From Phallusia mammillata (lineage: Eukaryota), in NCBI GenBank assembly GCA_965637545.1, contig OZ281499.1, positions 13,950,001-14,014,000 on the forward strand: a DNA stretch of 64,000 nt, in the 5' to 3' direction. Under the pieces are notes generated by a model. That model worked only from the letters and a program-made list of their open reading frames with translations, made no database searches and was not told where the DNA came from. Both the position numbers and the translations under genes were made by a program. This document shows, in pieces, positions 4,561-18,434 of this stretch (position 1 is the first letter of the stretch; each line of letters begins with the position of its first letter).

Positions 4561-5439
4561 TCGTGAAAATGTTACTTAACACTTTAGTTGAAAGTTCGTT
4601 TACAATGTTTGTTAAATAAAATTCCTGTTTCAATTAATTTGTGTTCCAATTCTATGGTTAAAAACTTTGCCCAAAAACGTTGGCCCGCAGGAGGATTGTC
4701 ATTCTGGCGAAATGAACGACGAAGATATGGAAAATTATTTTACGCACGACTGCACAAAATTTCACACAATTTTTAAGACTTTTAATTTTGCAGGTGCCGT
4801 ATTTCAACACAACCAGACGTCCGGAGTCACCCGTACATGTTTGGAAATGGCATAGATACCTGGACAGGATTTCTACCAATAAAACCATTTCTACCAATAA
4901 AACCACTAGAAATGTCCGAAATTTAGGGTACAATATTGTAAGGAATTTTTCAAAATCAGCAAAATTGCCAATTTGGGCAATTGAAAAAAAGAAAAATCAT
5001 CTGCTTTTTTTTCATTCCATATAAAAGCAAAAAATAACGACAACAGTAAATACAAAAGGTACACAGCATTTATGCTTCTGCTGTTCAATGCGCGGCATTT
5101 GTTGCACAACTTGGTGGTTCAGCACAGCTTGGTTTCTTTTATTGTTTTTAATGTGATGAATTTTAAGCACTCCTATACAGCAAAACAACCCTAAATAAAC
5201 TCCAATACCAAACACTTCTTCAAGCAATGAATTTCATTAACTCCAAAGTTCTGTGGCGGTCATTGTTACGTAGTTAATGCCTCGTGTCAGTATGGATACA
5301 TGGCGTGGACATGTTTCATTATTTCTGCGTTGTCGTTACGTTTGTACGTTGATTTTACCTTTCTAGTACTTCATTCAAAATTGTTGAAGTCAAAACTGTT
5401 GTTCTCGTTTAGGTAACACAAGTGTGTTGTTCAGTAAGC

Positions 5440-6420
5440 TAAGCAAGTCAGGAGCTTTGATAGGTGTGTTTAGCATGTGCAGCAGTGTACATTATTAGGT
5501 ATGAAGTTATAGCCTGTTTTAAACAATTCCCGAAAATCAGAATTGTATAAAAATGGGAAGAAATGTAGACGAAAGCATGCCTAAAACCTTGATAATAAAA
5601 TAAATTTGGCGCGATTAAAGAGTTTTCTGCAAAATAACTTTTTGTCAGACACCTATACAATTTAGCATGTGCATGCATTATTGCCTCTATGACGTAACAG
5701 TAGGAACCTTAAAGTTTAAAGCCTAATCTAAACACTTTCCGAAAATGAGAATTGAATAAAAGTTGGCAGAAATGTAGACCAAAGCATGCTTAAAACCTTG
5801 AAAGTAAAATAAATTTGGCGCGATTACAGAATTTTCAGCAAAATAACTTTTTGTCAGACACCTATACAATTTAGCATGTGCACCATTTTGGCTGTGACGT
5901 GACGGCTAAGCCCTTGAGTTTACAACTTTTTTCAAACACTTTCCGAAAATGAGAATTGAATAAAAATTGGCATAAATGTAGACCAAAGCATGCTTAAAAC
6001 CTTGGTAATAAAATAAATTTGGCGCGATTAAAGAATTTTCAGCAAAATAACTTTTTGTCAGACACCTATACAATTTAGCATGTGTATGCATTGTTGGCTA
6101 TATGACGTAACAGTAGGAACCTTAAAGTTTAAAGCCTAATCTAAACACTTTCCGAAAATGAGAATTGAATAAAAATTGGCAGAAGTGTAGACCAAAGCAT
6201 GCTTAAAACCTTGATAATAAAATAAATTTGGCGCGATTAAAGAATTTTCAGCAAAATAACTTTTTGTCAGACACCTTTACAATTTAGCATGTGTATGCAT
6301 TATTGGCTATATGACGTAACAGTAGGACCCTTAAAATTTAATGTAAACACTTGGAATTAAAAGGTTAAAAGCTCACTCTGAACACTTTCCGAAAAGTAGA
6401 ATTCTCTAAAAATTAAAATA
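5440..6420 (-). repeat. Left subterminal satellite array, ~4.5 copies of a 204-209-bp unit
   Basis: GGCGCGATT recurs at 5608, 5817, 6021, 6230. The array is the reverse complement of the right-arm array. Confidence 0.93.
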
Positions 6421-6534
6421 AGTGAAAGCTATTCGGTTATAGTTGCATTTGTAAACATTGCTCATTTATGCTATCGCAGAAAACATTGATTTATTATTCA
6501 ACTGAGAAATATTGAAAACCTTTTGTAAAACAAC

Positions 6535-7214
6535 ATGGGAAGACGAACGCCTGCTGTAAAATATTAGAAGGGAGTCAGTGGAAAACAAACAGGCTATCTC
6601 CGTGCTGACGGTTCACCACTTCCTTCTGTGTTGTTGGTGACGGACAGCAACGGAAGGAACCTTGTTTACCCACGGGTGGTATCATGTAACAGTGATTCAT
6701 TCGTTTTTAATGCAATTTCTCTTCCAGGTGGCCATATTGACCATGGATGCATCGAAGTGGAGTTTGGGCGAAAGTTCGGCAACGTCGACTTTGTGGTACT
6801 AGCACTTGGCACTAACGACGTTGATTCAGGCAAATCCATCGCCTGCGACGAAGCAGCTTACCGAAGCTTGGTTGAGGCGTCCTGCAGCGTGTACCCCAAA
6901 GCGCAGGTAGAATTGAGACAAAGGATTTTCCGTCAATTCAAGTAATAGTTGGTCAATATGGACGAATATTGTCGCAGATTATTGTGGCTGGAATTCTTCA
7001 GCAAAGGGGGATCACGGGCACCTTGTTCCAGAGATCAAAAAGGTGTTGCGCAACCTCGCCACGGGAATGGGCATCAGCTTCCTGGACTTTACCATCGGCC
7101 ATAATCGAGAGCTTTGGCACGACCGCCTACACTTGTCTGACGTCGGTTTGCGTCATTACATGGCCAGTCTTGAGGCTCATATTCATGCCCTTCTTGCTGC
7201 TTCCAGCGTGCCAA
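6535..7214 (+). pseudogene. SGNH/GDSL-fold hydrolase exons of the MULE polyprotein (exons 6535-6906 and 6978-7214)
   Basis: LLVTDSNG (block I), PGG (II), LALGTND (III), WHDRLHLS (V, 7121-7132). GT-AG introns 6907-6977 and 7215-7286. One in-frame TAG (6565) and a frameshift at the G-run 7006-7010. Confidence 0.75.
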
Positions 7215-7465
7215 GTGAGTAGTTGTGTTATTTAAATTTTGATGGTTGATCCCTAAATATAACCATAATATATTTCAATATTTTAGAAAAAATGTTGGGC
7301 TTTGCCGAAACCGACGGAATAAAGATAACGAAGAAGAAGAAATTCCGAAGTCGGCTGTGTTTTGGATGTGTGGCTGACCACATTCGTCCCTCATCCAAAA
7401 AGGCTAATCGGGACATCACACAAACGCCTTTTCCCAGCTTTGATGCCACCAGAAGAGTTTCGACT

Positions 7466-7780
7466 GGAGCGAAGGGCAAGGTGGCTGAGGTTGCTGGACC
7501 CCCTAGCAAAGCTGACGGTGGAGCGAGGGGCAAGGTGACTGAGGTTGCTGGACCCCCTAGCAAAGCTGACGGAGGAGCGAAGGGCAAGGTAGCTGCAGTT
7601 GCTGGACCCCCTAGCAAAGCAGAACGTGGAGCGAAGGGCAAGGTGGCTGAGGTTGCTGGACCCCCTAGCAAAGCTGACGGTGGAGCGAAGGGCAAGGTAG
7701 CTGCAGTTGCTGGACCCCCTAGCAAAGCTGACGGAGGAGCGAAGGGCAAGGTAGCTGAGGTTGCTCGACCCCCTAGCAAT
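7466..7780 (+). repeat. Coding tandem repeat, 54 bp x ~5.8 (GAKGKVAEVAGPPSKADG)
   Basis: Units start at 7466, 7520, 7574, 7628, 7682, 7736, in frame within ORF 7292-8527. Confidence 0.95.
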
Positions 7781-8657
7781 GGCAACACAGGAAATCTTTC
7801 AGAGCTTGTTTCGTTTGTGCTGCTGCTGCTAAATGTTGCCGGACTTGTGATTTTCTGCCTGGGTCTGTTCAGTTTGTTTTATTTTGATTTTATACTGTAT
7901 GGTTTGAGTTCCACCGGCTTACCTCAATTACTTAAATTCGCCATTGGTCTAACGAAAATTGTTTTTAGCTGGATACTACAATCACGTCGGTTTCGTGGAA
8001 CATTGAAGCAAAGACAAAGAAATCTTTATCGAAAAAAAAAATGTTTAAAACAACGACCAGGTATCAATTTGCCATTTACTTCTCATTTGCTACATCTGCC
8101 TAAAATTGTTAAAATTGGGGGTGGGCCACAAAAGGCAAATTTCGCCGAGACTGTTAAAGTCATTTCGGATTACATGACCCAGCACAACTTACAAAAATTT
8201 AATCGAGACCGTAGTTTAGGATTGCTGCGCGAAAGTCACTTGTGGAAAAATATGCCAATAATGAAGCGGTTTAGGTTTTTACAAAGCTTTTGCAGCAAGC
8301 ACCGCGACGTAATTAGTAAAAACCTATGTTCACTTTCGGTAACCGTTTTGAACAAGGATGTTTTTGTTGACGATCAAAACAAGATTGATAACGGTCCAAT
8401 TATCGCTTTGGCGAAATGCTTAGACCATTATCCAAATGTTTCAAAGTTGCCATACCGAGCGGTAAAAGCTTTTTTGGAGTCATCCGCTTTAGCCGTAAAT
8501 TCAAAAAATCGACAGAGTTTGCAATAGATGGATAACTGACTTAAGATTCAGACAGGCTGTTCAGCACTCTTATACTGAAATAAATGGAGATTGCGATGTT
8601 GTTGTCAAACAATCTGAAAATAGTTCAGTCACTAATTCACTTAACGAATCCATTACG

Positions 8658-8760
8658 TATTGTGTTTGTCAAACCCCTTATGATGGTCGGTTAATGGTTG
8701 AATGCGAAACTTGCTCACAGTGGTATCACCCCAGTTGCGTATTTGATTGTTGTTCTCCCG
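8658..8760 (+). pseudogene. PHD finger of the MULE polyprotein
   Basis: YCVCQTPYDGRLMVECETCSQWYHPSCV; the frame is open upstream of the annotated 8694 start. Confidence 0.85.
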
Positions 8761-9399
8761 CAGTTACGTTTTCGGCTGTCGAGTGGAATCGTACTCATAT
8801 GGTTTGTCCTAATAGCAGGCATCGTTTTAGATCGTTTTATGAACACAAAATAATGGACTTAACAGATGGGCCCGAATCTGTTAAAAATAACTCGCCAGTA
8901 ACTGTTTTAAGTAATATTTTAGAGAGTTCGTCGTCTTGTGACCCCTCTGTCGTTTCTCCTACCTTACCAAAGACTGAATTTTGTGTATTGCCAGTGGCCA
9001 ACGATTCTTTGTCTCATTCTGTTACTATTAACGGCGAGAATGATCATTTAGTTTTGTATGAAAACGCTGAGTCGAACAAAACGCTTACTGAAGAATGTGT
9101 TGATAGTACTTGTAGCGACTTTTTGAGTGAGGATTGTTTTGTGGATAATGTTTTTGATGAACTTGGAAAAATAAATGACGCAACAAGATCAGAATATAAA
9201 CACAACGATGATATTAACATACAAGAAAAGTTTATTATTTCATTGCAAGAATGGCACTCTATGGTTAAAAATAGAAAAACAAACCACTTCCATGGTTCTC
9301 GATACGTTGAAATCACGTTGCATTACTTGCATCAAATTTATAGCGGTTGTGTGCCTAATGTAAAAAATAAATACCTGATTGATCCAAATGGAGTTGTTG

Positions 9400-11000
9400 C
9401 AATTTCTAAAGCAGATAAATGCTACAAGGAAGGTTGGATAAATTTTTACTGTGGTCATCAAAATTGTGAGACTTGTAATTGCGAAACTAAATTAGTGGTA
9501 ACGTTTTGGTCGTTTGTTGACAGAGTTGGAGGGCATGTTGAAATAAGTGGTAAAAGAAATCATCGTCCCGGATGTAAACGTAGTAGGCGTTGCTGTGGGC
9601 CAATGAGGAAAAAGCTTCGCAAATCTTTACAGAACCAAACCGCTGTTAAAAAATATAGGGAAATTTACGATGGCATGAAACCGGAGGAACGATGGTTAGG
9701 GGCCCACACTTTTTTACCGTCACAATCTGTATTAAATAATATTAAAAGTGAAAGTAATTATGGTCACCGAAAAAGCAAACTCTGGTTTATAAACCTCAAT
9801 TCGATTGGAAATGGATGAAAAACAAAATCGTTTTGTAAGAGTAATAAGTTTACACCCCCCAATGGTAATCCTGTACATAGATGCACCGATAAAAATCTTT
9901 CATCGCACTTGCATGTTTGACGTGGTTTACTTCAATGCGACCGGAAGTATTTTATGCCGCCTTCAAAATTACTCTGATTTCCAAGTTTACACTTTACTTA
10001 TTCGAAACCCGACACCAGGGAGCACACCGCTACCTGTTGCTACGTGCGTAACAAGTCACCACGACGCCAATACAATTAGTCACTTTTTAGAAAACTTTTT
10101 ATTTGATGCGGTAAAATTGTGTGGGACAGCGAAAAAACCCAAGTTGATAGTAATTGATGGCTCAATGGCAATGTGGAACGCTGTTTTAAAAGCAATGTGT
10201 CGCGAATCGCGCTTAGATTATTACAGGCGTTGTTACAGAATTGTAACAGGTGTACCTGGCGATTCCGACCTGCAAAAAAACATTTGTTGCCAATTGCTAT
10301 AGCCACGCTATGAAAGCAGCAAAAATTTTGTGTGGTAAATACTGCAAAAACAAAAAACTAGTCAAAACCTACTTGTTTTGGATAAACGTCATGTTTTCGT
10401 GTTCGACCGTTAAAGAGTTAGACGAAGCAGTAGAAAGCTTTTTCATTTTAACCAACAGCGAAGCTTCTTCCTCATTGGTCGAATTGCATTTTAAAAGACT
10501 TAAGTCACAAGGTCAGTCGCAATCCGCTCGGTTCGACCATGACAATGACGGCAAAACAGTTACAGACGAAACCGACTATTTTTTTACTGCAAAAGCATCG
10601 GACAAGTTGCAAGAAAGTCACTCACCCTTCTATGCCAGATACAAACGAAAATTAGATACCGTTCTTAAAACAATATCTGATTCTACACCACCGACCCAAA
10701 TGCATACAAATATATACCATAACACTGAGATTTCGAGTAAAGTTTTGGAAATAACTTTAAGCAGAATCTGTTCTACTTCAAAATTTATGCTTGGAGATTT
10801 GTCCCGACATATGCACAAAGGCACAACTTCCGGTGATCAATCGCTAAAGTACAAACAGCATAGTGATATATGTAACAACCTTAAACAACTAGGCCATCAA
10901 AGCATTTTGAAGAACAACCGAACCCAAGGAATTATTGAACAACATTTTGGAGATTTAAAAACAAATGTGATAGATTGGAAACGAATTGCTAAAATTGACG
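9400..11000 (+). pseudogene. NOF/Rehavkus-type Mutator DDE transposase core
   Basis: Cys/His-rich region (CGHQNC..GKRNH), VYFNATGS (expected Asp reads Asn at 9934), PLPVATC..HH, LIVIDGSMA (10156), CYSH (10295-10306), QGIIEQHF (10937). Frameshifts near 9810 and 10275. Confidence 0.8.
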
Positions 11001-11489
11001 ACTTCGTTGTAAAGTATTATCAAGCCATAATGATTTTGCAAAAACTGTTTGCTGACTCCCACATTTATCTTAAATCCACCCAAAATCGTACTTCGAGCAA
11101 GAAACTATTGACTCCTGTGATTGAGTCAAAATTTAGAAAAAGAAAACGCAAACGAACAAGTTATTACTCTTCAGATACTGCTTTTAAGCAGCTACAATAC
11201 CGGAATGAAACTTCGAAAGAAACAGGAATGTCCCCTAGTCCTTTCACGGCACGATTTGCTTTTTGCCCTGACCCGGAAATATTGATTTCAATTTGCAAAC
11301 CTGTTGCAGATTTCATTTGGCACCAAATTCTCCACAACACCCAGTCCATATTTGAAACTGCAATAATCACTAAATGGCGCCATTCATTGTCATGGTTGGA
11401 CATGTGTTCGGTTTGCCCAAAACCAAGGGGCAAAACGTATATTGCGCTTACTGAAAATTTTGCTCGTTCTCACAACGATGCGACGCTTG

Positions 11490-12075
11490 GGTGGTTAACG
11501 GATAAAGTTGTAGATTGCTATATTACTAGAACTGTCGCCATATGTAATTCGATTTCGCCTGGTAAATTTGCATGTGTGTCAAGTGTTTTAGCTTCTGAAA
11601 TTTTAAGTGGAAAATAATTAAAAACATGCAACGAGCATTAAAAGGAATAATAAACAGTGACGGACAGTTATGTGAAAATGTTGTTTTACCCGTTTTGTAT
11701 GAAAATCATTTTGTTGTGTTGTGGTTAAGTCAGTTGAATAATACTCTAGTTCTGTACGACTCGGTTGTTTCCAGCAGCGATCGCTTGAAAAGTTTAGTAA
11801 ACAAATACCTTATTCCAGCCCTTAAATGTATAACTGACCAGGACATTACATTTACAAGTGATTCGACAGTCGTTCAGCAAGACCAGTCTAGTTGTGGATT
11901 ATGCGTTTGTTATACAGTTGATCGCCTTGCATCAGCCATTCTTGAGATGATTCGACAGTCGTTCAGCAAGACCAGTCTAGTTGTGGATTATGCGTTTGTT
12001 ATACAGTTGATCGCCTTGCATCAGCCATTCTTGAGATTCGCCATGTAAACTTTGACGTTACGAACTATCGAGTTT
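11490..12075 (+). pseudogene. Ulp1/SENP-like (C48) cysteine protease domain
   Basis: WLTDKVVDCY, PVLYENHF (His 11707), LYDS (Asp 11758), QQDQSSCG (Cys 11893). Confidence 0.82.
11860..12037 (+). repeat. Exact 89-bp tandem duplication disrupting the Ulp1-USP frame
   Basis: 11860-11948 is repeated at 11949-12037; removing one copy puts ORFs 11626 and 12078 in the same frame. Confidence 0.95.
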
Positions 12076-12077
12076 GG

Positions 12078-13661
12078 TTGGTGTACGCATTGGTTCAAGA
12101 TTCATTAAGTTGTAACTTAAAAATAATAAATTTCTCGAAGAAGAAAACTGGGGTCTCAGTTGGTCTTCCAAACAAGTTTAATAACTGCTGGATGAATTCT
12201 GTACTGCAGGGTATACAAAGTATATTTGTAGATTTACCGAGTGTTTTAATTGATTGTAACGATCTAAATGGGAGAGTTGCGAACGTAATTTGCGACCTCC
12301 GACGAGGGAAAGTGGAAGAGGCAGCTTACCTTCGGTTAGTCCGCGATATGTGTTGTCATCTTGGTTGGGTTCTCGGCCAACACCAAGATGCAAGTGAATT
12401 TTTGCAAATCTTTGATTTCAATTATGTTTTGAAAGGTTGTAATTTAGATTGTACGTTTCAGCTACATATAACAAAAACGTGTAAGTCATGTGACCAACAA
12501 TCTAATATTCTTCATAAACAATCGGTTTTAGCTTTGCCAGTTTTTGAAACAATTCCAGATAATAGCAATATAAATGCATACTGTGAAGAGAAATTTCGTG
12601 GCGTGAAGTTAGGTTTTTGTGCTAGTTGCAACTTGGAAAAGGAAATCGTTTTTGAATCACACCTAGAAAATGTATCAGATATTTTGTGCGTTGTTTTGCA
12701 TAGAAACATAACAGGCCAAAAAACAACCAAACGCGTAAAAGCCACACAATTGTTGTCGTTTAAATCCGCTTCAGAAGAGTATGTTTACCAGTTAATGTCT
12801 GTTGTTGTTCACGTCGGAACGAAAGTTGATTCTGGGCATTACATTACCTACAAAATTAATGGCGATAAAATAACTGAACTTAACGATTTGGTAGTAAAAG
12901 ACATGTTTTGGGACTCTGTTGAGGAAAATATTTCCACAGGATCTTGTATTTTGTTTTATCGAAAAAAATCAGTGAATGCACTTTGTAAAGATCAATCCTC
13001 TGAAAGTGACGAGGGTGATCAAACGATTAAAGTAGTCCCTAGAAAGCGTCGTCGTATGGACGCATCAGCCGTTGTCACTACGGAACGAATAGATTATAGG
13101 GACATAGAATTAATGCAGACAGACAGCAAGGGAGAGGTAGTGGCGCTTTCTGGTCCAGAGATACTTGAAGCTTCCGTAGCAGAAGTTTACAAATTTGTCA
13201 ATTGTCAGCTTTTGTCCGCTATGTCAAAGTCGTTTGAGGTCGGCAAACATGAACTTGAGTGTTATCGTTTATGCCTTTTTTCGAAAAACCGTAGAAAGCA
13301 GTTGACCGGTTACAACTTAAGGTCAACTTTGGAAAAAACATCATTGTTAACAGACACGTTTCAAAACCTAATGCGATTTTTAGATTATTCACTTTGTCGA
13401 TTTCGCGTCCGACAACGTCTTATGGGTAAGCAAGTATATAGGGAAACAAGTGTTTGCAAGGAGTTGAAGCCAGAAATAGCCATCCAAGGAAGCATTATTC
13501 ACAGTTTGCTTCAGGTTGAAACATTCGACATATCTTTTTTACCAACAATGTGTTATAAGTTACATGGAAGCAGCCATTTACTACATAATGCATGTCGAAA
13601 GTTTAACGTATATGAAAGCGTCCAAACGAATAGGAATTTCGGCAGTAGCATATGTGAATAA
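12078..13661 (+). CDS. Ubiquitin-specific protease (C19) domain plus unknown C-terminal region; C-terminus of the MULE polyprotein
   Basis: GLPNKFNNCWMNSVLQ (Cys 12186), QHQDASEFL, CKSC..CASC, VVHVGTKVDSGHYITY (His 12837), ELND. 527-aa open frame. Confidence 0.88.
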   Translation: MVYALVQDSLSCNLKIINFSKKKTGVSVGLPNKFNNCWMNSVLQGIQSIFVDLPSVLIDCNDLNGRVANVICDLRRGKVEEAAYLRLVRDMCCHLGWVLGQHQDASEFLQIFDFNYVLKGCNLDCTFQLHITKTCKSCDQQSNILHKQSVLALPVFETIPDNSNINAYCEEKFRGVKLGFCASCNLEKEIVFESHLENVSDILCVVLHRNITGQKTTKRVKATQLLSFKSASEEYVYQLMSVVVHVGTKVDSGHYITYKINGDKITELNDLVVKDMFWDSVEENISTGSCILFYRKKSVNALCKDQSSESDEGDQTIKVVPRKRRRMDASAVVTTERIDYRDIELMQTDSKGEVVALSGPEILEASVAEVYKFVNCQLLSAMSKSFEVGKHELECYRLCLFSKNRRKQLTGYNLRSTLEKTSLLTDTFQNLMRFLDYSLCRFRVRQRLMGKQVYRETSVCKELKPEIAIQGSIIHSLLQVETFDISFLPTMCYKLHGSSHLLHNACRKFNVYESVQTNRNFGSSICE

Positions 13662-15044
13662 AATGTAAATTGATACCGTTTTTTTATTGTGTGTATTGAC
13701 ATTCATATATTTTAAAAACACCTAAACCCTGAAATATTGAATAAATTTAAACTGGAGATTGTGTGTTAATTATTTTGCACTGTTTCGGTAAATAAACCAT
13801 GCACATCGATACTGCTGTACATTATATAATTCTCCGACAAACATATATTGAAAGTTCTTTAATCGCGCCAAATTTATTTTATTACCAAGGTTTTCAGCAG
13901 GCTTTGGTCTACATTTCTGCCAATTTTTATTCAATTCTCATTTTCGGAAAGTGTTCAAAAAAAGTTGTAAAACTCAAGGGCTTAGCGGTCACGTCGTAGC
14001 CAAAATGGAGCACATGCTAAATTGTGTAGGTCTCTGACAAAAAGTTATTTTGCTGAAAATTCTTTAATCGCGCCAAATTTATTTTACTGTCAAGGTTTTA
14101 AGCATGCTTTGATCGACATTTCTGCCAATTTTTATTCAATTCTCATTTTCGGAAAGTGTTTAAATTCAGCTTTAAACTTTAAGGTTCCTACTGTTACGTC
14201 ATATAGCCAATGATGCATACATGTTCTGAATGGTATAGGTCTCTGACAAAACGTTATTTTGCGAAAAATTCTTTAATCGCGCCAAATTTATTTTATTACC
14301 AAGGTTTTAAGCATGCTTTGGTCTACATTTCTGCCAATTTTTATTCAATTCTCATTTTCGGAAAGTAAAGACTTAGCCGTCTCGTCACAGCCAAAATGGT
14401 GCACATGCTGAATTGTATAAGTCTCTGACAAAAAGTCATTTTGCTGAAAATTCTTTAATCGCGCCAAATTTATTTTATTACCAAGGTTTTAAGCATGCTT
14501 TGGTTTACATTTCTGCCAACTTTTATTAAATTCTCATTTTCGGAAAGTGTTCAAATTAGGCTTTAAACTTTAAGGTTCCTACTGTTACGTCATATAGCCA
14601 ACAATGCATACACATGCTAAATTGTATGTGTCTGACAAAAAGTTACTTTGCTGAAAATTCTTTAATCGCGCCAAATTTATTTTATTACCAAGGTTTTAAG
14701 CATGCTTTGGTCTACACTTCTGCCAATTTTTATTCAATTCTCATTTTCGGAAAGTGTTTAGATTAGGCTTTAAATGTTAGGGGCCTACTGTTACGTCATA
14801 GCCAATAATGCATATACATGCTGAATTGTATAGGTGTCTGACAAAAAGTTACTTTGCTGAAAATTCTTTAATCGCGCCAAATTTATTTTATTACCAAGGT
14901 TTTAAGCATGCTTTGGTCTACACTTCTGCCAATTTTTATTCAATTCTCATTTTTGGAAAGTGTTTAAATTCAGCTTTAAACTTTAAGGTTCCTACTGTTA
15001 CGTCATATAGCCAATGATGCATACATATTCTGAATGGTATAGGT

Positions 15045-15969
15045 CAGGGGCGGGCAACTTCTACAGTCGGCGGGCCTGATATGGGAAAATGAAGTACTTG
15101 GCGGGCCGGATTCCTGAATCGATACATTAATCGCGTATTTATCCAATGATTTAAAACGGATTTTTGACCACCTAAACCAGGGGTGGGGAACCTTTTCGTT
15201 TATAAAAGCTACCTAACGATTTATCGACACTCGTGTAGGCCGCATAGACTATTTCCCAGGCCAAGGGCAGTGAGGTTCAAACTTTTTGACTTACACAATG
15301 GTCGTTTTGCTATTTCCTCGTAGTTTGTAGGACTTACGGTCCCAGCTAATTAAAATTCCTCACTACATTTTCATCTTCACTACAACATTCAGGATTTATT
15401 TAACCTAGAAATTGCTGAACCTGGAGTTTTTGGTAGTCCTAACTATGGAAATCGCTTTATGTACCACTATGGGACCACATGGGTCTTGTTTGAAAACCGC
15501 TGCCCTGGAACTAATCAAAAAATAATCTGCAATAAAGTCAAAAATACGTTTCTGTCTATTTTTTTCAGCGCCTGGTGCAGTCGGTTATATCAACATCTTA
15601 AAAATGTATTTTGCCATCGAAGGCCGCACTTAGTGCCCTGAAAGACCGCATGTGGCCTTTAGGCCGCAGGTTCCCCACCCCTGCCTGAACTAGGCTATAC
15701 GTGTGGAAACAAAGAAAACCGTTAAAGTAGGACACACACGGTTGGTAGTTATGTCGTAACAATGGACGTATGGTGCAATGGTAACAACGGCGGGAAATTT
15801 TTTTGCTATTGGGGAGCGTTACTGTGCGTTACAACTGTAATTTGACGTAGTAAGCAAGTAATGGGGGATTGCGGCAGACTGTGGCCGCGGGCCACATTAT
15901 CATGTAAGACCGGAAACTGTCCGCGGGCCGCTCAAAATCCCGTCGCGGGCCGTATGTTGCCCACCCCTG
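15045..15969. mobile_element. hAT MITE inserted in the satellite
   Basis: TIRs CAGGGGCGGGCAAC / GTTGCCCACCCCTG; TSD GTATAGGT at 15037-15044 and 15970-15977. Confidence 0.92.
15178..15683. mobile_element. hAT MITE nested in the previous MITE
   Basis: TIRs CAGGGGTGGGGAACC / GGTTCCCCACCCCTG; degenerate flanks CCTAAAC / CCTGAAC. Confidence 0.85.
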
Positions 15970-18434
15970 GTATAGGTCTCTGACAAAACGTTATTTTGCG
16001 AAAAATTCTTTAATCGCGCCAAATTTATTTTATTACCAAGGTTTTAAGCATGCTTTGGTCTACATTGCTGCCAATTTTTATTCAATTCTCATTTTCGGAA
16101 AGTGTTCAAAAAAAGTTGTAAAACTCAAGGGCTTAGCGGTCACGTCGTAGCCAAAATGGAGCACATGCTAAATTGTGTAGGTCTCTGAAAAAAGTTATTT
16201 TGCTGAAAATTCTTTAATCGCGCCAAATTTATTTTACTGTCAAGGTTTTAAGCATGCTTTGATCGACATTTCTGCCAATTTTTATTCAATTCTCATTTTT
16301 GGAAAGTGTTTAAATTCAGCTTTAAACTTTAAGGTTCCTACTGTTACGTCATATAGCCAATGATGCATACATATTCTGAATGGTATAGGTCTCTGACAAA
16401 ACGTTATTTTGCGAAAAATTCTTTAATCGCGCCAAATTTATTTTATTACCAAGGTTTTAAGCATGCTTTGGTCTGCATTTCTGCCAATTTTTATTCAATT
16501 CTCATTTTCGGAAAGTAAAGACTTAGCCGTCTCGTCACAGCCAAAATGGTGCACATGCTAAATTGTATAAGTCTCTGACAAAAAGTCATTTTGCTGAAAA
16601 TTCTTTAATCGCGCCAAATTTATTTTATTACCAAGGTTTTAAGCATGCTTTGGTTTACATTTCTGCCAACTTTTATTAAATTCTCATTTTCGGAAAGTGT
16701 TCAAATTAGGCTTTAAACTTTAAGGTTCCTACTGTTACGTCATATAGCCAACAATGCATACACATGCTAAATTGTATGTGTCTGACAAAAAGTTACTTTG
16801 CTGAAAATTCTTTAATCGCGCCAAGTTTATTTTATTACCAAGGTTTTAAGCATGCTTTGGTCTACACTTCTGCCAATTTTTATTCAATTCTCATTTTCGG
16901 AAAGTGTTTAGATTAGGCTTTAAATATTAGGGGCCTACTGTTACGTCATATAGCCAACAATGCATACACATGCTGAATTGTATAGGTGTCTGACAAAAAG
17001 TTACTTTGCTGAAAATTCTTTAATCGCGCCAAATTTATTTTATTACCAAGGTTTTAAGCATGCTTTGGTCTACACTTCTGCCAATTTTTATTCAATTCTC
17101 ATTTTCGGAAAGTGTTTGAAAAAAGTTGTAAACTCAAGGGCTTAGCCGTCACGTCACAGCCAAAATGGTGCACATGCTAAATTAAATAGGTCTCTGGCCA
17201 TAAGTTATTTTGCTGAAAATTCTTTAATCGCAAATTTATTTTATTACCAAGGTTTTAAGCATGCTTTGGTCTACATTTCTGCCAGTTTTTATAGAATTCT
17301 CATTTTCGGAAAGTGTTTAAAATCAGTTGTAAAATTCAAGGGCTTAGCCGTTACTTCACAGACAAAATGGTGCACTTGCTAAATTGTATAGGTCGCTTAA
17401 AAATCATAATTGGAGATCCAGATCAAAACGGTATTTTTTTTTCTATCAAAAAAAAGAAGTTGTTTTTAACATTAAAATATATTAGTTTTTGGAAACACTG
17501 CAGAAAAATATTTCTTCTTTCTCCCTATTTTCATTTCGCCAGAATGACAATCCTCCCGCAGGCATATAGACCTGATAAAAAATGGCCCCCATTAAAAAAA
17601 AGTTTGGACACCCCTGTAGTAGATCATGACCATGAGGATGGAAGTTTAACTAATCTCTCTGTAAAAAAAGAAAAAATCACAGTTTAGCAAATGATCCAGG
17701 TTTGTGGCTTGATTTCTCTGCTGATGATGTGGCTTATTGGATCGCCTGTGGACCCAGTAACGCCAACACCACAATGGACCATTTGAAGTCTTACCGGCGT
17801 TTTAGTAGTGGCAAACCAGTAGTACGGTACTGTTCACAGAAACTGTTTATCGGGACAAAAGTCAATGGTGAAAAATACAAGAGAGAGTGATTACTGTATT
17901 CACTATCAACAGGATCAATTTATTGTTTTGTTTGTAAACTTTTTGCTCCAAAAATATCGCGTATTGTAATTGACAATCATGGGAAAGGCTTCAATCGTCG
18001 AAACTCTCTGTTAACATATTTAACTCGCAGACAAGTTTCGAGGTTGGATTCACAATTGGAGAAACAAATTCAAGATTAGTGTGATTCCTGGGAACATGTC
18101 TTGAGGCGTGTCATAGCTGTTATTTGTACGTTAGCTGAACGCTGCTTGGCTTTTCGGGGATCAGACGACATGTTTGGATCATTGCACAACGGGAATTTTT
18201 TAGGAGTGCTTGAACTCATCAGCCAGTTTAATCCATTTTTAGCAGGCCACATTTCTAAATGTGGAAATTCTGGAAGAGGAAATACTTCTTACTTGTCAAA
18301 ACCACCTGCGAGGAAATTATTGAACTGATGGCACAAAAGGTCCATGCGTTCTTGTTGACGAAGTTAAGTCTTCTGGTTGTTTTAGTCTGTCCGTTAATTA
18401 AACACGAGATCTATCACATATCGATCAGCTAAGG

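What the first reader, a model, noticed from the sequence alone, without database searches (positions are those of the whole stretch)
11490..13000. Tandem Ulp1 and USP proteases in one frame, catalytic residues intact
Seen: Ulp1-like His/Asp/Gln/Cys and USP Cys-box and His-box are all present. Deleting the exact 89-bp duplication gives an uninterrupted linker (AILEIRHVNFDVTNYRVWLVYALVQD). Inference: a dual-specificity deconjugase fused to a transposase; the intronless USP looks like integrated cargo rather than a host gene.
Basis: partly seen in the sequence, partly recalled or inferred. Interest (0 to 1): 0.82.

Follow-up and report, generated by a model that had tools for sequence, protein, structure and literature searches.

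The report
Transposon protein carrying two deconjugating proteases
This stretch is the broken protease end of a giant jumping-gene protein that joins a Mutator-type transposase to a SUMO-type and a ubiquitin-type protease; intact, selected copies elsewhere in the genome show the pairing is a working part of the transposon, not a captured host gene.

Summary
Both domains are real. In the window, the Ulp1/SENP-type (C48) His, Asp, Gln and Cys are present. So are the USP (C19) Cys box, zinc-ribbon cysteines, His box and Asp.

"One frame" is only partly true here. The exact 89-bp tandem duplication exists. The copy has six frame breaks in all.

The stretch lies in a 12,863-bp foldback Mutator-like DNA transposon (4692-17554) with 25-bp terminal inverted repeats and an 8-bp target duplication.

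Other natural copies read transposase, Ulp1 and USP in one open frame. One is a structurally complete element with a 2435-aa ORF.

- **Folds:** the model matches yeast Ulp1 (Z 20.6) and USP12 (Z 25).
- **Selection:** dN/dS is 0.15-0.25.
- **Conservation:** catalytic residues are invariant across lineages only 22-45% identical, including metagenome contigs.
- **Origin:** the transposon USPs form their own clade apart from the genome's other USPs. This is an old, integral module, not recent cargo.

Ulp1 on Mutator elements and C19 on other transposases are published. I found no description of the tandem pair, so I rate it a new variant of a known kind. Substrates are inferred.

The scan had already noted this same element on this window (s1-351704), not on other DNA.

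The parts
4692..17554 (+). Whole foldback Mutator-like DNA transposon (12,863 bp); decayed autonomous copy
   Evidence: The TIR pair and TSD were found. The same termini with 8-bp TSDs occur in three other copies. It is multi-copy in the genome.
4684..4691 (.). Left 8-bp target-site duplication CCCGCAGG (right copy at 17555-17562)
   Evidence: Read directly.
4692..4716 (+). Left 25-bp terminal inverted repeat (right copy at 17530-17554, reverse complement, perfect match)
   Evidence: ten genomic matches against 0 for the reversed control pattern.
5507..6341 (.). Left subterminal arm repeats, inverted relative to 13849-14773 in the right arm (foldback structure)
   Evidence: the same genomic repeats hit query 1508-2342 on one strand and 9850-10774 on the other. 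One search shows repeated ORF units at 13799-17145.
7250..8524 (+). N-terminal ORF piece: Ala/Pro/Lys-rich tandem repeats, a hydrophobic segment, and a V-K-I-G-G motif
   Evidence: It is homologous to residues 11-556 of the intact 1734-aa ORF in L033.
8499..9815 (+). ORF piece with a PHD-type finger (around 8650-8760) and a Cys/His-rich putative DNA-binding domain
   Evidence: One search aligns it to L033 and L031. The PHD Pfam hits are in the intact relatives. A frame break sits at about 8512.
9793..10299 (+). Transposase core, first part. The first catalytic Asp reads Asn here (AAT 9934-9936); the second Asp is at 10156-10158.
   Evidence: Other runs read G at 9934, which gives GAT, Asp.
10247..11614 (+). 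Transposase core, second part (CxxH 10295-10306, Glu 10937-10939), running into the N-terminal helices of the Ulp1 domain (11303-11614)
11615..11617 (+). In-frame TAA created by a 1-nt deletion; it splits the Ulp1 domain
   Evidence: No indel is seen here in three independent DNA runs.
11626..11947 (+). Ulp1/SENP-type (C48) catalytic core: His 11707, Asp 11758, Gln 11875-11880, Cys 11893
   Evidence: Pfam C48 gives 16.2 bits. The fold of relative L022 matches Ulp1 at Z 20.6.
11859..12036 (+). Exact 89-bp tandem duplication (two units); it shifts the frame between Ulp1 and USP
   Evidence: It is absent from other copies. Contigs of three independent DNA runs (k-mer assembly) stop and restart inside it as expected for a real repeat.
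12159..12959 (+). USP (C19) domain: Cys box (Cys 12186), QxDxxEF, CxxC...CxxC zinc ribbon, His box (His 12837), Asp 12885
   Evidence: Pfam UCH gives 44.6 bits and 45.2 bits. The fold of the relative matches USP12 at Z 25.0 and Foldseek E 4e-18.
12960..13665 (+). Basic (NLS-like) linker and a conserved C-terminal domain of unknown fold; frame break at about 13534-13541
   Evidence: In the L022 model it is residues 590-760, pLDDT 63-95 per 10-residue block, mostly above 80. No family was found for it.

Best explanation
The region is the protease module of a dead copy of an autonomous foldback-type Mutator-like (MULE) cut-and-paste transposon. In intact relatives the element encodes one giant protein of 2300-2435 aa. 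From the N terminus it has:
- tandem repeats;
- a PHD finger;
- a Cys/His DNA-binding region;
- a DDE transposase with a CxxH motif;
- a Ulp1/SENP-type cysteine protease (C48);
- a USP-type cysteine protease (C19);
- a conserved C-terminal domain of unknown fold.

**Shown.** Both proteases have canonical folds, invariant catalytic residues and purifying selection within the transposon lineage. The window copy itself is disabled by six frame breaks and a D-to-N change at the first transposase Asp.

**Inferred.** Because the two proteases are tethered to the transposase, they would act where the transposase binds. There they would remove SUMO-type and ubiquitin-type conjugates. Possible targets are the transposase itself, local chromatin or silencing factors, and repair proteins at the excision or insertion site. 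The effect would be to protect the element from SUMO/ubiquitin-dependent silencing or degradation, or to steer repair.
For: **Element**
- 25-bp TIRs and 8-bp TSDs occur in the window copy, in three other family-B copies and in the family-A element.

**Single frame in natural copies**
- L022 has a 994-aa ORF, L033 a 1734-aa ORF and L031 a 2435-aa ORF.
- Pfam finds PHD and UCH above their cut-offs in L031; C48 scores 18.5 bits, below its 20.7 cut-off.
- Own-genome tblastn finds at least four diverged lineages (100, 41, 40 and 33% aa identity) that all span Ulp1, USP and the C-terminal domain. Several are open for 2306-2435 aa.

**Folds** (AF2 model, pLDDT 85)
- Ulp1 1euv Z 20.6, SENP1 Z 20.4, USP12 Z 25.0.
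- All of the top 50 Foldseek hits are USPs.

**Catalytic residues**
- They are invariant across seven sequences at 22-45% identity and are present in the window.

**Selection**
- dN/dS is 0.15 for Ulp1, 0.25 for USP and 0.18 for the C-terminal domain between two family-D copies.
- It is 0.215 for USP between L022 and the window.

**Transposase type**
- The best PDB match is the IS256-family ISCth4 transposase, Z 12.6.
- Atlas neighbours are MULE clusters and a NOF-FB cluster that carries C48 and PHD.

**Origin of the USP**
- The transposon USPs form a clade apart from the genome's other USPs: own-genome copies 96% SH-aLRT, 85% with the metagenome relatives.

**Same architecture elsewhere**
- It appears in a TARA metagenome contig, an ENA assembly contig and JGI contigs.
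Against: - No activity or substrate has been shown for either domain.
- C48 scores are under Pfam's cut-off in the window and in family A (16.2 and 18.5 against 20.7 bits).
- Phe replaces the Trp that usually follows the catalytic His in SENPs.
- The transposase has no Pfam MULE hit even at E 10, so the superfamily call rests on motifs, structure and TSD length.
- Expression evidence is one 163-nt contig in a run only guessed to be RNA.
- Amplified deletion derivatives that lack half of each protease still spread. The proteases are therefore not needed in cis, though that is expected if they act in trans.
Confidence: 0.8

Rival explanations
1. The two proteases mainly mature the transposon's own 2400-aa polyprotein, cutting it after Gly-Gly sites as adenain and coronavirus PLpro do for viral polyproteins. 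They would not primarily act on host conjugates. This is not exclusive of the main explanation.
For: - A V-K-x-G-G motif is conserved upstream of the PHD finger in families A and B and in the window. It lies at the boundary between the repeat/hydrophobic N-terminal part and the nuclear part.
- GG dipeptides are few, 2-5 per complete protein.
- Both folds include known polyprotein-processing members, for example PLpro rows at Z 13.
Against: - No conserved GG lies at the transposase/Ulp1, Ulp1/USP or USP/C-terminal junctions across families.
- GG positions in the metagenome homologues do not align clearly.
- Ulp1 and OTU domains in other transposons sit on much shorter, single-unit transposases (PMC2836005).
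Confidence: 0.2
2. The USP (or both proteases) is recently captured host-gene cargo, as in Pack-MULE transduplication, carried passively and without function for the element.
For: - MULEs are known to capture host fragments, including Ulp1 in plants (PMC13317346).
Against: - It is fused in frame within single ORFs of up to 2435 aa.
- It is conserved with invariant catalytic residues across lineages at 22-45% identity and in other organisms' DNA.
- dN/dS is 0.2-0.25.
- The USPs form a separate clade from the genome's other USPs.
- They score 45-61 bits against the Pfam profile, against 106-240 bits for the six best-scoring other USP loci.
Confidence: 0.03
3. The locus is a domesticated host gene derived from a transposase-protease fusion, not a mobile element.
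For: Transposase-derived host genes are common. A Styela clava homologue is annotated as an ordinary uncharacterized protein.
Against: - The window copy has TIRs, a TSD, six frame breaks and a mutated catalytic Asp.
- The family is multi-copy, with deletion derivatives and TSD-flanked insertions at unrelated sites.
Confidence: 0.02

Closest known systems
Mutator-like elements carrying a Ulp1 domain (plant KI-MULEs/Kaonashi; Mutator elements of hydra and lancelet) and the Drosophila FB-NOF foldback element
   Same: - The transposase is Mutator/IS256-like, with foldback arms made of tandem repeats and a TSD in the 8-10 bp range.
- A C48 Ulp1 domain, often with a PHD finger, is attached to or carried by the element (PMC2836005; PMC13317346; PMC4079207).
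- An Atlas cluster named after the NOF-FB 120.7 kDa protein, with C48 in 45% and PHD in 34% of members, is the nearest structural neighbour of the transposase model.
   Different: - Here a complete USP (C19) domain and a further conserved C-terminal domain follow the Ulp1 domain in the same ORF.
- The transposase is too diverged for Pfam's MULE model.
- In plants the Ulp1 domain sits in a separate gene of the element, not in the transposase.
Ginger1 transposases with a C-terminal OTU or Ulp1 protease
   Same: A DNA-transposon transposase is fused at its C-terminus to a ubiquitin-like-protein protease, sometimes with a PHD finger. The authors proposed that the ubiquitin/SUMO pathway is involved in transposition (PMC2836005).
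   Different: - Ginger uses a Gypsy-integrase-type transposase.
- Each Ginger1 protein has either OTU or Ulp1, 'but not both'. Here two different deconjugase families sit in tandem.
Transposases associated with C19/UCH domains (a Trichomonas vaginalis transposase_11 + C19 protein; Helentron/HLE2 elements with UCH)
   Same: A USP-type deubiquitinase domain is carried by a DNA transposon (PMC2836005; PMC11417382).
   Different: - The transposition machinery differs (IS4-like DDE, or rolling-circle RepHel).
- No tandem Ulp1 has been described for them.
- In Helentrons the domains are treated as stably captured additions whose role is unknown.
Cellular USPs (USP12/46, USP14, USP30, USP2) and SENP/Ulp1 proteases
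   Same: They share folds and catalytic architecture: Z 25.0 to USP12, 20.6 to yeast Ulp1, 20.4 to SENP1.
   Different: - Sequence identity is only 11-24%.
- The regulatory domains of the cellular enzymes are absent.
- The two folds are joined in one chain behind a transposase.
- Cellular enzymes of these families are not known to me as C48-C19 tandems (my own knowledge, not tested).

Membership tests
Peptidase C19 (USP/UBP, clan CA) | Profile match above the curated threshold (Pfam PF00443) | tested here: met
   The window ORF 12078-13658 scores 44.6 bits against a cut-off of 23.9, E 1.8e-11. L022 scores 54 bits and L031 44.8 bits.
Peptidase C19 (USP/UBP, clan CA) | Cys box, His box and Asp/Asn of the catalytic triad, in that order | tested here: met
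   Window Cys 12186, His 12837, Asp 12885. These are invariant in alignment A5 and aligned to the USP36 boxes by phmmer.
Peptidase C19 (USP/UBP, clan CA) | USP fold (fingers, palm, thumb) with the zinc-ribbon cysteines | tested here: met
   The model of L022 (78% aa identical to the window piece) matches USP12 at Z 25.0, rmsd 2.7 over 259 residues. Foldseek gives E 4e-18. Four invariant Cys are present.
Peptidase C19 (USP/UBP, clan CA) | Isopeptidase activity on ubiquitin or a ubiquitin-like protein | not testable with these tools
   This needs an enzyme assay.
Peptidase C48 (Ulp1/SENP, clan CE) | Profile match above the curated threshold (Pfam PF02902) | tested here: not met
   The window piece scores 16.2 bits and L031 18.5 bits against a cut-off of 20.7. 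Only the distant relative L072 passes, at 29.4 bits.
Peptidase C48 (Ulp1/SENP, clan CE) | Catalytic His, Asp, oxyanion Gln and Cys in that order, plus the N-terminal Trp of the Gly-Gly tunnel | tested here: met
   Window Trp 11492, His 11707, Asp 11758, Gln 11875-11880, Cys 11893. These are invariant in A5. The second tunnel Trp is Phe here.
Peptidase C48 (Ulp1/SENP, clan CE) | Ulp1 protease fold | tested here: met
   Model residues 1-249 match 1euv_A at Z 20.6 (210 of 221 residues, rmsd 2.8), SENP1 at Z 20.4 and the NEDD8 protease at Z 19.4.
Peptidase C48 (Ulp1/SENP, clan CE) | Specificity for SUMO rather than NEDD8 or another modifier | not testable with these tools
   Structural neighbours with different substrates are tied within 1.2 Z units.
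Mutator/MULE superfamily (foldback clade) | Pfam MULE transposase domain (PF10551) | tested here: not met
   Four transposase regions give no hit even at E 10.
Mutator/MULE superfamily (foldback clade) | DDE catalytic residues with a C/DxxH motif between the second D and the E | tested here: met
   Conserved blocks are seen in alignment A2. In the window the first D is N.
Mutator/MULE superfamily (foldback clade) | Structural kinship with IS256/Mutator transposases | tested here: inconclusive
   ISCth4 (IS256 family) is the top PDB match at Z 12.6, ahead of the P element (8.1) and Hermes (7.9). Atlas neighbours are nearly all MULE clusters. However, the model's pLDDT is 70 and rmsd is 5.2.
Mutator/MULE superfamily (foldback clade) | TSD of 8-10 bp and long or composite TIRs | tested here: met
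   8-bp TSDs occur in five elements. Foldback arms made of tandem repeats are seen. The range for foldback/Mutator elements is given in PMC4079207 and PMC3169594.
Zisupton/KDZ superfamily (considered because of the 8-bp TSD) | KDZ-type transposase domain | tested here: not met
   Pfam gives no hit of any kind. Structural and feature neighbours are MULE, not KDZ. The 8-bp TSD alone is shared (PMC12730594).
Pack-MULE-type captured host fragment | Close similarity to a parental host gene and no constraint on the captured part | tested here: not met
   The tree separates transposon USPs from the genome's other USPs. dN/dS is 0.15-0.25.

The most novel reading that the evidence does not exclude
A lineage of animal Mutator/foldback transposons has kept a transposase-tethered pair of deconjugases for a long time. 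One is SUMO- or NEDD8-type and the other ubiquitin-type. The pair would serve as a counter-defence module that erases both kinds of mark at the element's own chromatin or on its own protein. In that reading it is a mobile-element analogue of viral deubiquitinase/deISGylase immune evasion.

A distant relative has the same two protease families in the opposite order (L072). This suggests the pairing itself, not one accidental fusion, is what is selected.
Probability: 0.25. Interest if true: 0.8.

Novelty: new variant of a known kind. Interest (0 to 1): 0.55.

Why it matters
- Ulp1, OTU and USP domains recur on unrelated transposons, yet the role of even the best-known case is still stated to be unknown (PMC13317346).
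- Here two different deconjugase families are held together under purifying selection in one transposase.
- The family has a structurally complete element with an intact 2435-aa ORF. A second copy is identical over the 736-aa protease and C-terminal module. The element may therefore have been active recently.
- That gives a concrete system for asking whether transposons manipulate SUMO and ubiquitin signalling, and which of silencing, transposase stability or repair choice is the target.
- It also warns annotators that an 'intronless USP' of this type is a transposon domain, not a host gene.

Tried and rejected
- **Word-based protein search of the protease module.** It was blank with one sequence. 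With the alignment it returned one unrelated fungal USP. This reflects the method's limits and is not evidence of absence, because the exhaustive search did find relatives.
- **Transposase in Pfam and PDB by sequence.** Pfam gave nothing at E up to 10. PDB sequence search gave nothing.
- **Zisupton/KDZ.** I considered it because of the 8-bp TSD and my recollection that the family carries a SUMO protease. I dropped it for lack of any KDZ signal, and because the structural and feature neighbours are MULE.
- **Viral origin.** A scan of viral contigs with two conserved peptides found no relative.
- **C-terminal domain.** No family was found. The Atlas gave only weak TFIIB/cyclin-like leads at 0.81, and this part was barely tested in the fold search. 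It stays unidentified.
- **TIRs around the TARA homologue (L044).** None were found; the contig may not hold the ends.
- **Further genome stretches.** Later loci came from the genome search.
- **Complex prediction was not run.** The only intronless ubiquitin-like gene the family search returned was NEDD8, and the test's controls cannot tell one ubiquitin-like partner from another.
- **Expression.** There is only a 163-nt contig at 11948-12110 in a run guessed to be RNA. This is inconclusive.
Full report
**Observation**

The 89-bp duplication is exact (11859-11947 and 11948-12036). Other genomic copies carry one unit only: their alignments break at that point with an 88-nt overlap. The window's + strand carries a chain of ORFs: 7250-8524, 8499-9815, 9793-10299, 10247-11614, 11599-12045 and 11946-13658.

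Pfam finds UCH in the last ORF (44.6 bits, E 1.8e-11, cut-off 23.9). It finds a sub-threshold C48 match in the 11626 ORF (16.2 against 20.7 bits).

- Ulp1: His 11707, Asp 11758, Gln 11875-11880, Cys 11893.
- USP: Cys 12186, His 12837, Asp 12885, plus four zinc-ribbon cysteines.

Removing one repeat unit joins the 11626 and 12078 ORFs.

The Ulp1 domain starts further upstream (11303-11614, including the GWLT Trp) in a different frame. It is cut off by a 1-nt deletion that creates a TAA at 11615-11617. So 11490-13000 is in three frames, not one.

**The element**

The region sits in a 12,863-bp element, 4692-17554.
- It has perfect 25-bp terminal inverted repeats and an 8-bp target-site duplication, CCCGCAGG.
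- The same terminus occurs ten times in the genome, against zero for the control pattern.
- Three other copies have their own 8-bp duplications.
- The arms are long inverted arrays of tandem repeats, which is a foldback structure.

Compared with intact relatives, the window copy has six frame breaks: about 8512, 9800, 10276, 11615, the duplication, and about 13540. Its first transposase Asp reads Asn. This copy is dead.

**Intact relatives**

Natural copies show the arrangement directly.
- L022 (same family, 84% nt identity) has a 994-aa open frame running from the end of the transposase through Ulp1, USP and the C-terminal domain.
- L033 has a 1734-aa frame running from the N-terminal repeats through PHD, transposase and Ulp1. 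Its USP is deleted.
- L031, from a sister family, has an uninterrupted 2435-aa frame with PHD, transposase, C48 and UCH.
- That element is structurally complete: about 17.7 kb, 2.4-kb arms 96% identical, related TIR, 8-bp TSD GTTTTGCC.
- A second copy on another chromosome is 100% identical over the 736-aa module.
- A protein search of the genome finds at least four diverged lineages (100, 41, 40 and 33% identity). All span Ulp1, USP and the C-terminal domain, and several are open for 2306-2435 aa.

**Folds and catalytic residues**

An AlphaFold2 model of the 760-aa module of L022 has a mean pLDDT of 85 and three domains.
- Residues 267-533 match USP12 (Z 25.0, rmsd 2.7 Å, 259 aligned), USP14, USP2 and USP30.
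- Residues 1-249 match yeast Ulp1 (Z 20.6, 210 of 221), SENP1 (20.4) and the NEDD8 protease (19.4).
- The top 50 Foldseek hits are all USPs, best E 4e-18.
- phmmer aligns the Cys and His boxes to USP36.

Seven sequences at 22-45% identity were aligned, three of them from metagenomes. In that alignment the Ulp1 His, Asp, Gln and Cys are invariant. So are the USP Asn, Cys, the four zinc cysteines, His and Asp.

**Selection and origin**

Nei-Gojobori dN/dS between two family-D copies is 0.15 for Ulp1, 0.25 for USP and 0.18 for the C-terminal domain, at dS 0.08-0.42. Between L022 and the window's USP it is 0.215 at dS 0.70.

In a tree of 48 USP domains:
- The own-genome transposon USPs form a clade (96% SH-aLRT).
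- The metagenome relatives with the same domain order form another clade (98%).
- The two join at 85%.
- The genome's other USPs fall among ordinary USPs.

The complete transposon USP domains score 45-61 bits against the Pfam profile. The six best-scoring other USP loci score 106-240 bits. The fusion is therefore old and maintained, not recent cargo.

**Elsewhere**

The exhaustive search of 1.84 billion representatives found 160 hits, but only 24 below 1e-10.
- The best hits span the Ulp1-USP junction (P0001, P0003, P0004, P0005, P0008, P0020).
- Every one looked up is an unnamed protein from ENA, JGI or Logan assemblies.
- P0005 (2074 aa, TARA contig) has PHD, the same transposase (39% identity), Ulp1 and USP.
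- An ENA contig and several JGI contigs repeat the architecture.
- The transposase part also matches an 'uncharacterized protein' of the tunicate Styela clava.
- The ESM Atlas holds one automatically named cluster of 65 proteins with C48 plus UCH.
- One distant relative (L072) has transposase, then USP, then Ulp1, which is the opposite order. Its USP does not group with the others, although it sits on a long branch.

**Reads**

Contigs from three independent DNA studies cover the region.
- They stop at 11888 and restart at 12008, about 30 nt (the reach of one assembly k-mer) inside the 89-bp repeat from either side.
- No 'skip 89' joint appears. This is the pattern expected if the duplication is real in all three.
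- No indel appears at 11615, so that break is real too.
- One run has two extra bases at 8513 that would remove the first frame break.
- Other runs read G at 9934, which gives Asp. Some of the lesions are therefore still polymorphic.

**Transposase type**

Pfam does not recognise the transposase. It does have conserved D, D, CxxH and E blocks.
- Its model (pLDDT 70) is closest to the IS256-family ISCth4 transposase (Z 12.6), then the P element and Hermes.
- Atlas neighbours by features and by shape are MULE clusters, plus a cluster named after the NOF-FB foldback protein that carries C48 and PHD.
- Foldback elements are mostly assigned to Mutator, with 8-10-bp duplications (PMC4079207, PMC3169594).

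I file it as a diverged foldback-type MULE. One profile test was not met.

**How it probably works**

*Shown:* a transposase-linked pair of intact, constrained cysteine proteases of the SENP and USP folds.

*Inferred:* they deconjugate SUMO-type (or NEDD8-type) and ubiquitin-type modifiers wherever the transposase is. That would protect the protein or the element's chromatin from modifier-dependent silencing or degradation, or bias repair. This follows the proposal made for Ginger and Mutator Ulp1/OTU domains (PMC2836005).

A non-exclusive rival is self-processing of the polyprotein. A V-K-x-G-G motif upstream of the PHD finger in families A and B and in the window suggests it.

**Known and new**

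Already published:
- Ulp1 on Mutator elements of plants, hydra and lancelet.
- OTU or Ulp1, 'but not both', on Ginger1.
- C19 on a Trichomonas transposase.
- UCH, C48 and OTU on Helitron-like elements.

Five full-text searches for the tandem pair on a transposase found no description. I rate this a new variant of a known kind, of moderate interest.

My boundaries and domain order agree with that note.

Noticed in passing
L072:16-3855 (JGI metagenome contig): A distant MULE-like transposase is followed by USP (72.7 bits) and then Ulp1 (29.4 bits), the reverse order of the window's family. The Ulp1 Cys motif continues in another frame after a short gap, which may be an intron or a frameshift.
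   Followed up: partly
window 8099-8119 (and L031 ORF residue 411, L033 ORF residue 425): A conserved V-K-x-G-G motif lies between the hydrophobic N-terminal part and the PHD finger. It resembles the C-terminal Gly-Gly of ubiquitin-like proteins, so it is a candidate self-cleavage site. This is speculative.
   Followed up: partly
window 9934-9936: The first catalytic Asp of the transposase reads Asn (AAT) in the window. Contigs of three other runs read G at 9934, giving GAT (Asp), so the lesion is polymorphic or specific to this assembly's individual.
   Followed up: partly
G000:C6:9775482-9793204 (L030, L031, L032): This is a structurally complete sister-family element of about 17.7 kb. It has 2.4-kb foldback arms of ~186-bp tandem repeats 96% identical, 8-bp TSD GTTTTGCC and an intact 2435-aa ORF. 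A copy on C1 (22.74 Mb) is identical over the protease and C-terminal module, so the element was probably active recently.
   Followed up: partly
G000, e.g. C3:24179502-24180749, C7:1315373-1316620, C6:26491661-26492908: At least twelve near-identical copies exist of a deletion derivative of the sister family. It has a 636-aa open frame and lacks the C-terminal half of Ulp1 and the N-terminal half of USP. This is an amplified non-autonomous form that keeps an ORF.
   Followed up: no
window 12036-13541 compared with L022: Synonymous divergence is very uneven along the module: USP dS 0.70 against C-terminal domain dS 0.12. The family-D pair shows a similar pattern. This suggests recombination between subfamilies.
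   Followed up: no
window 6568-6942: An upstream ORF inside the element gives a weak GDSL/SGNH-hydrolase match (21.6 bits, below the cut-off). This is consistent with the scan's note of an esterase exon at the N-terminus.
   Followed up: partly
window 8513 and 13534: One run carries two extra bases at 8513. Most contigs in all three DNA runs carry an extra T at 13534. Both sites coincide with frame breaks of the window copy.
   Followed up: partly
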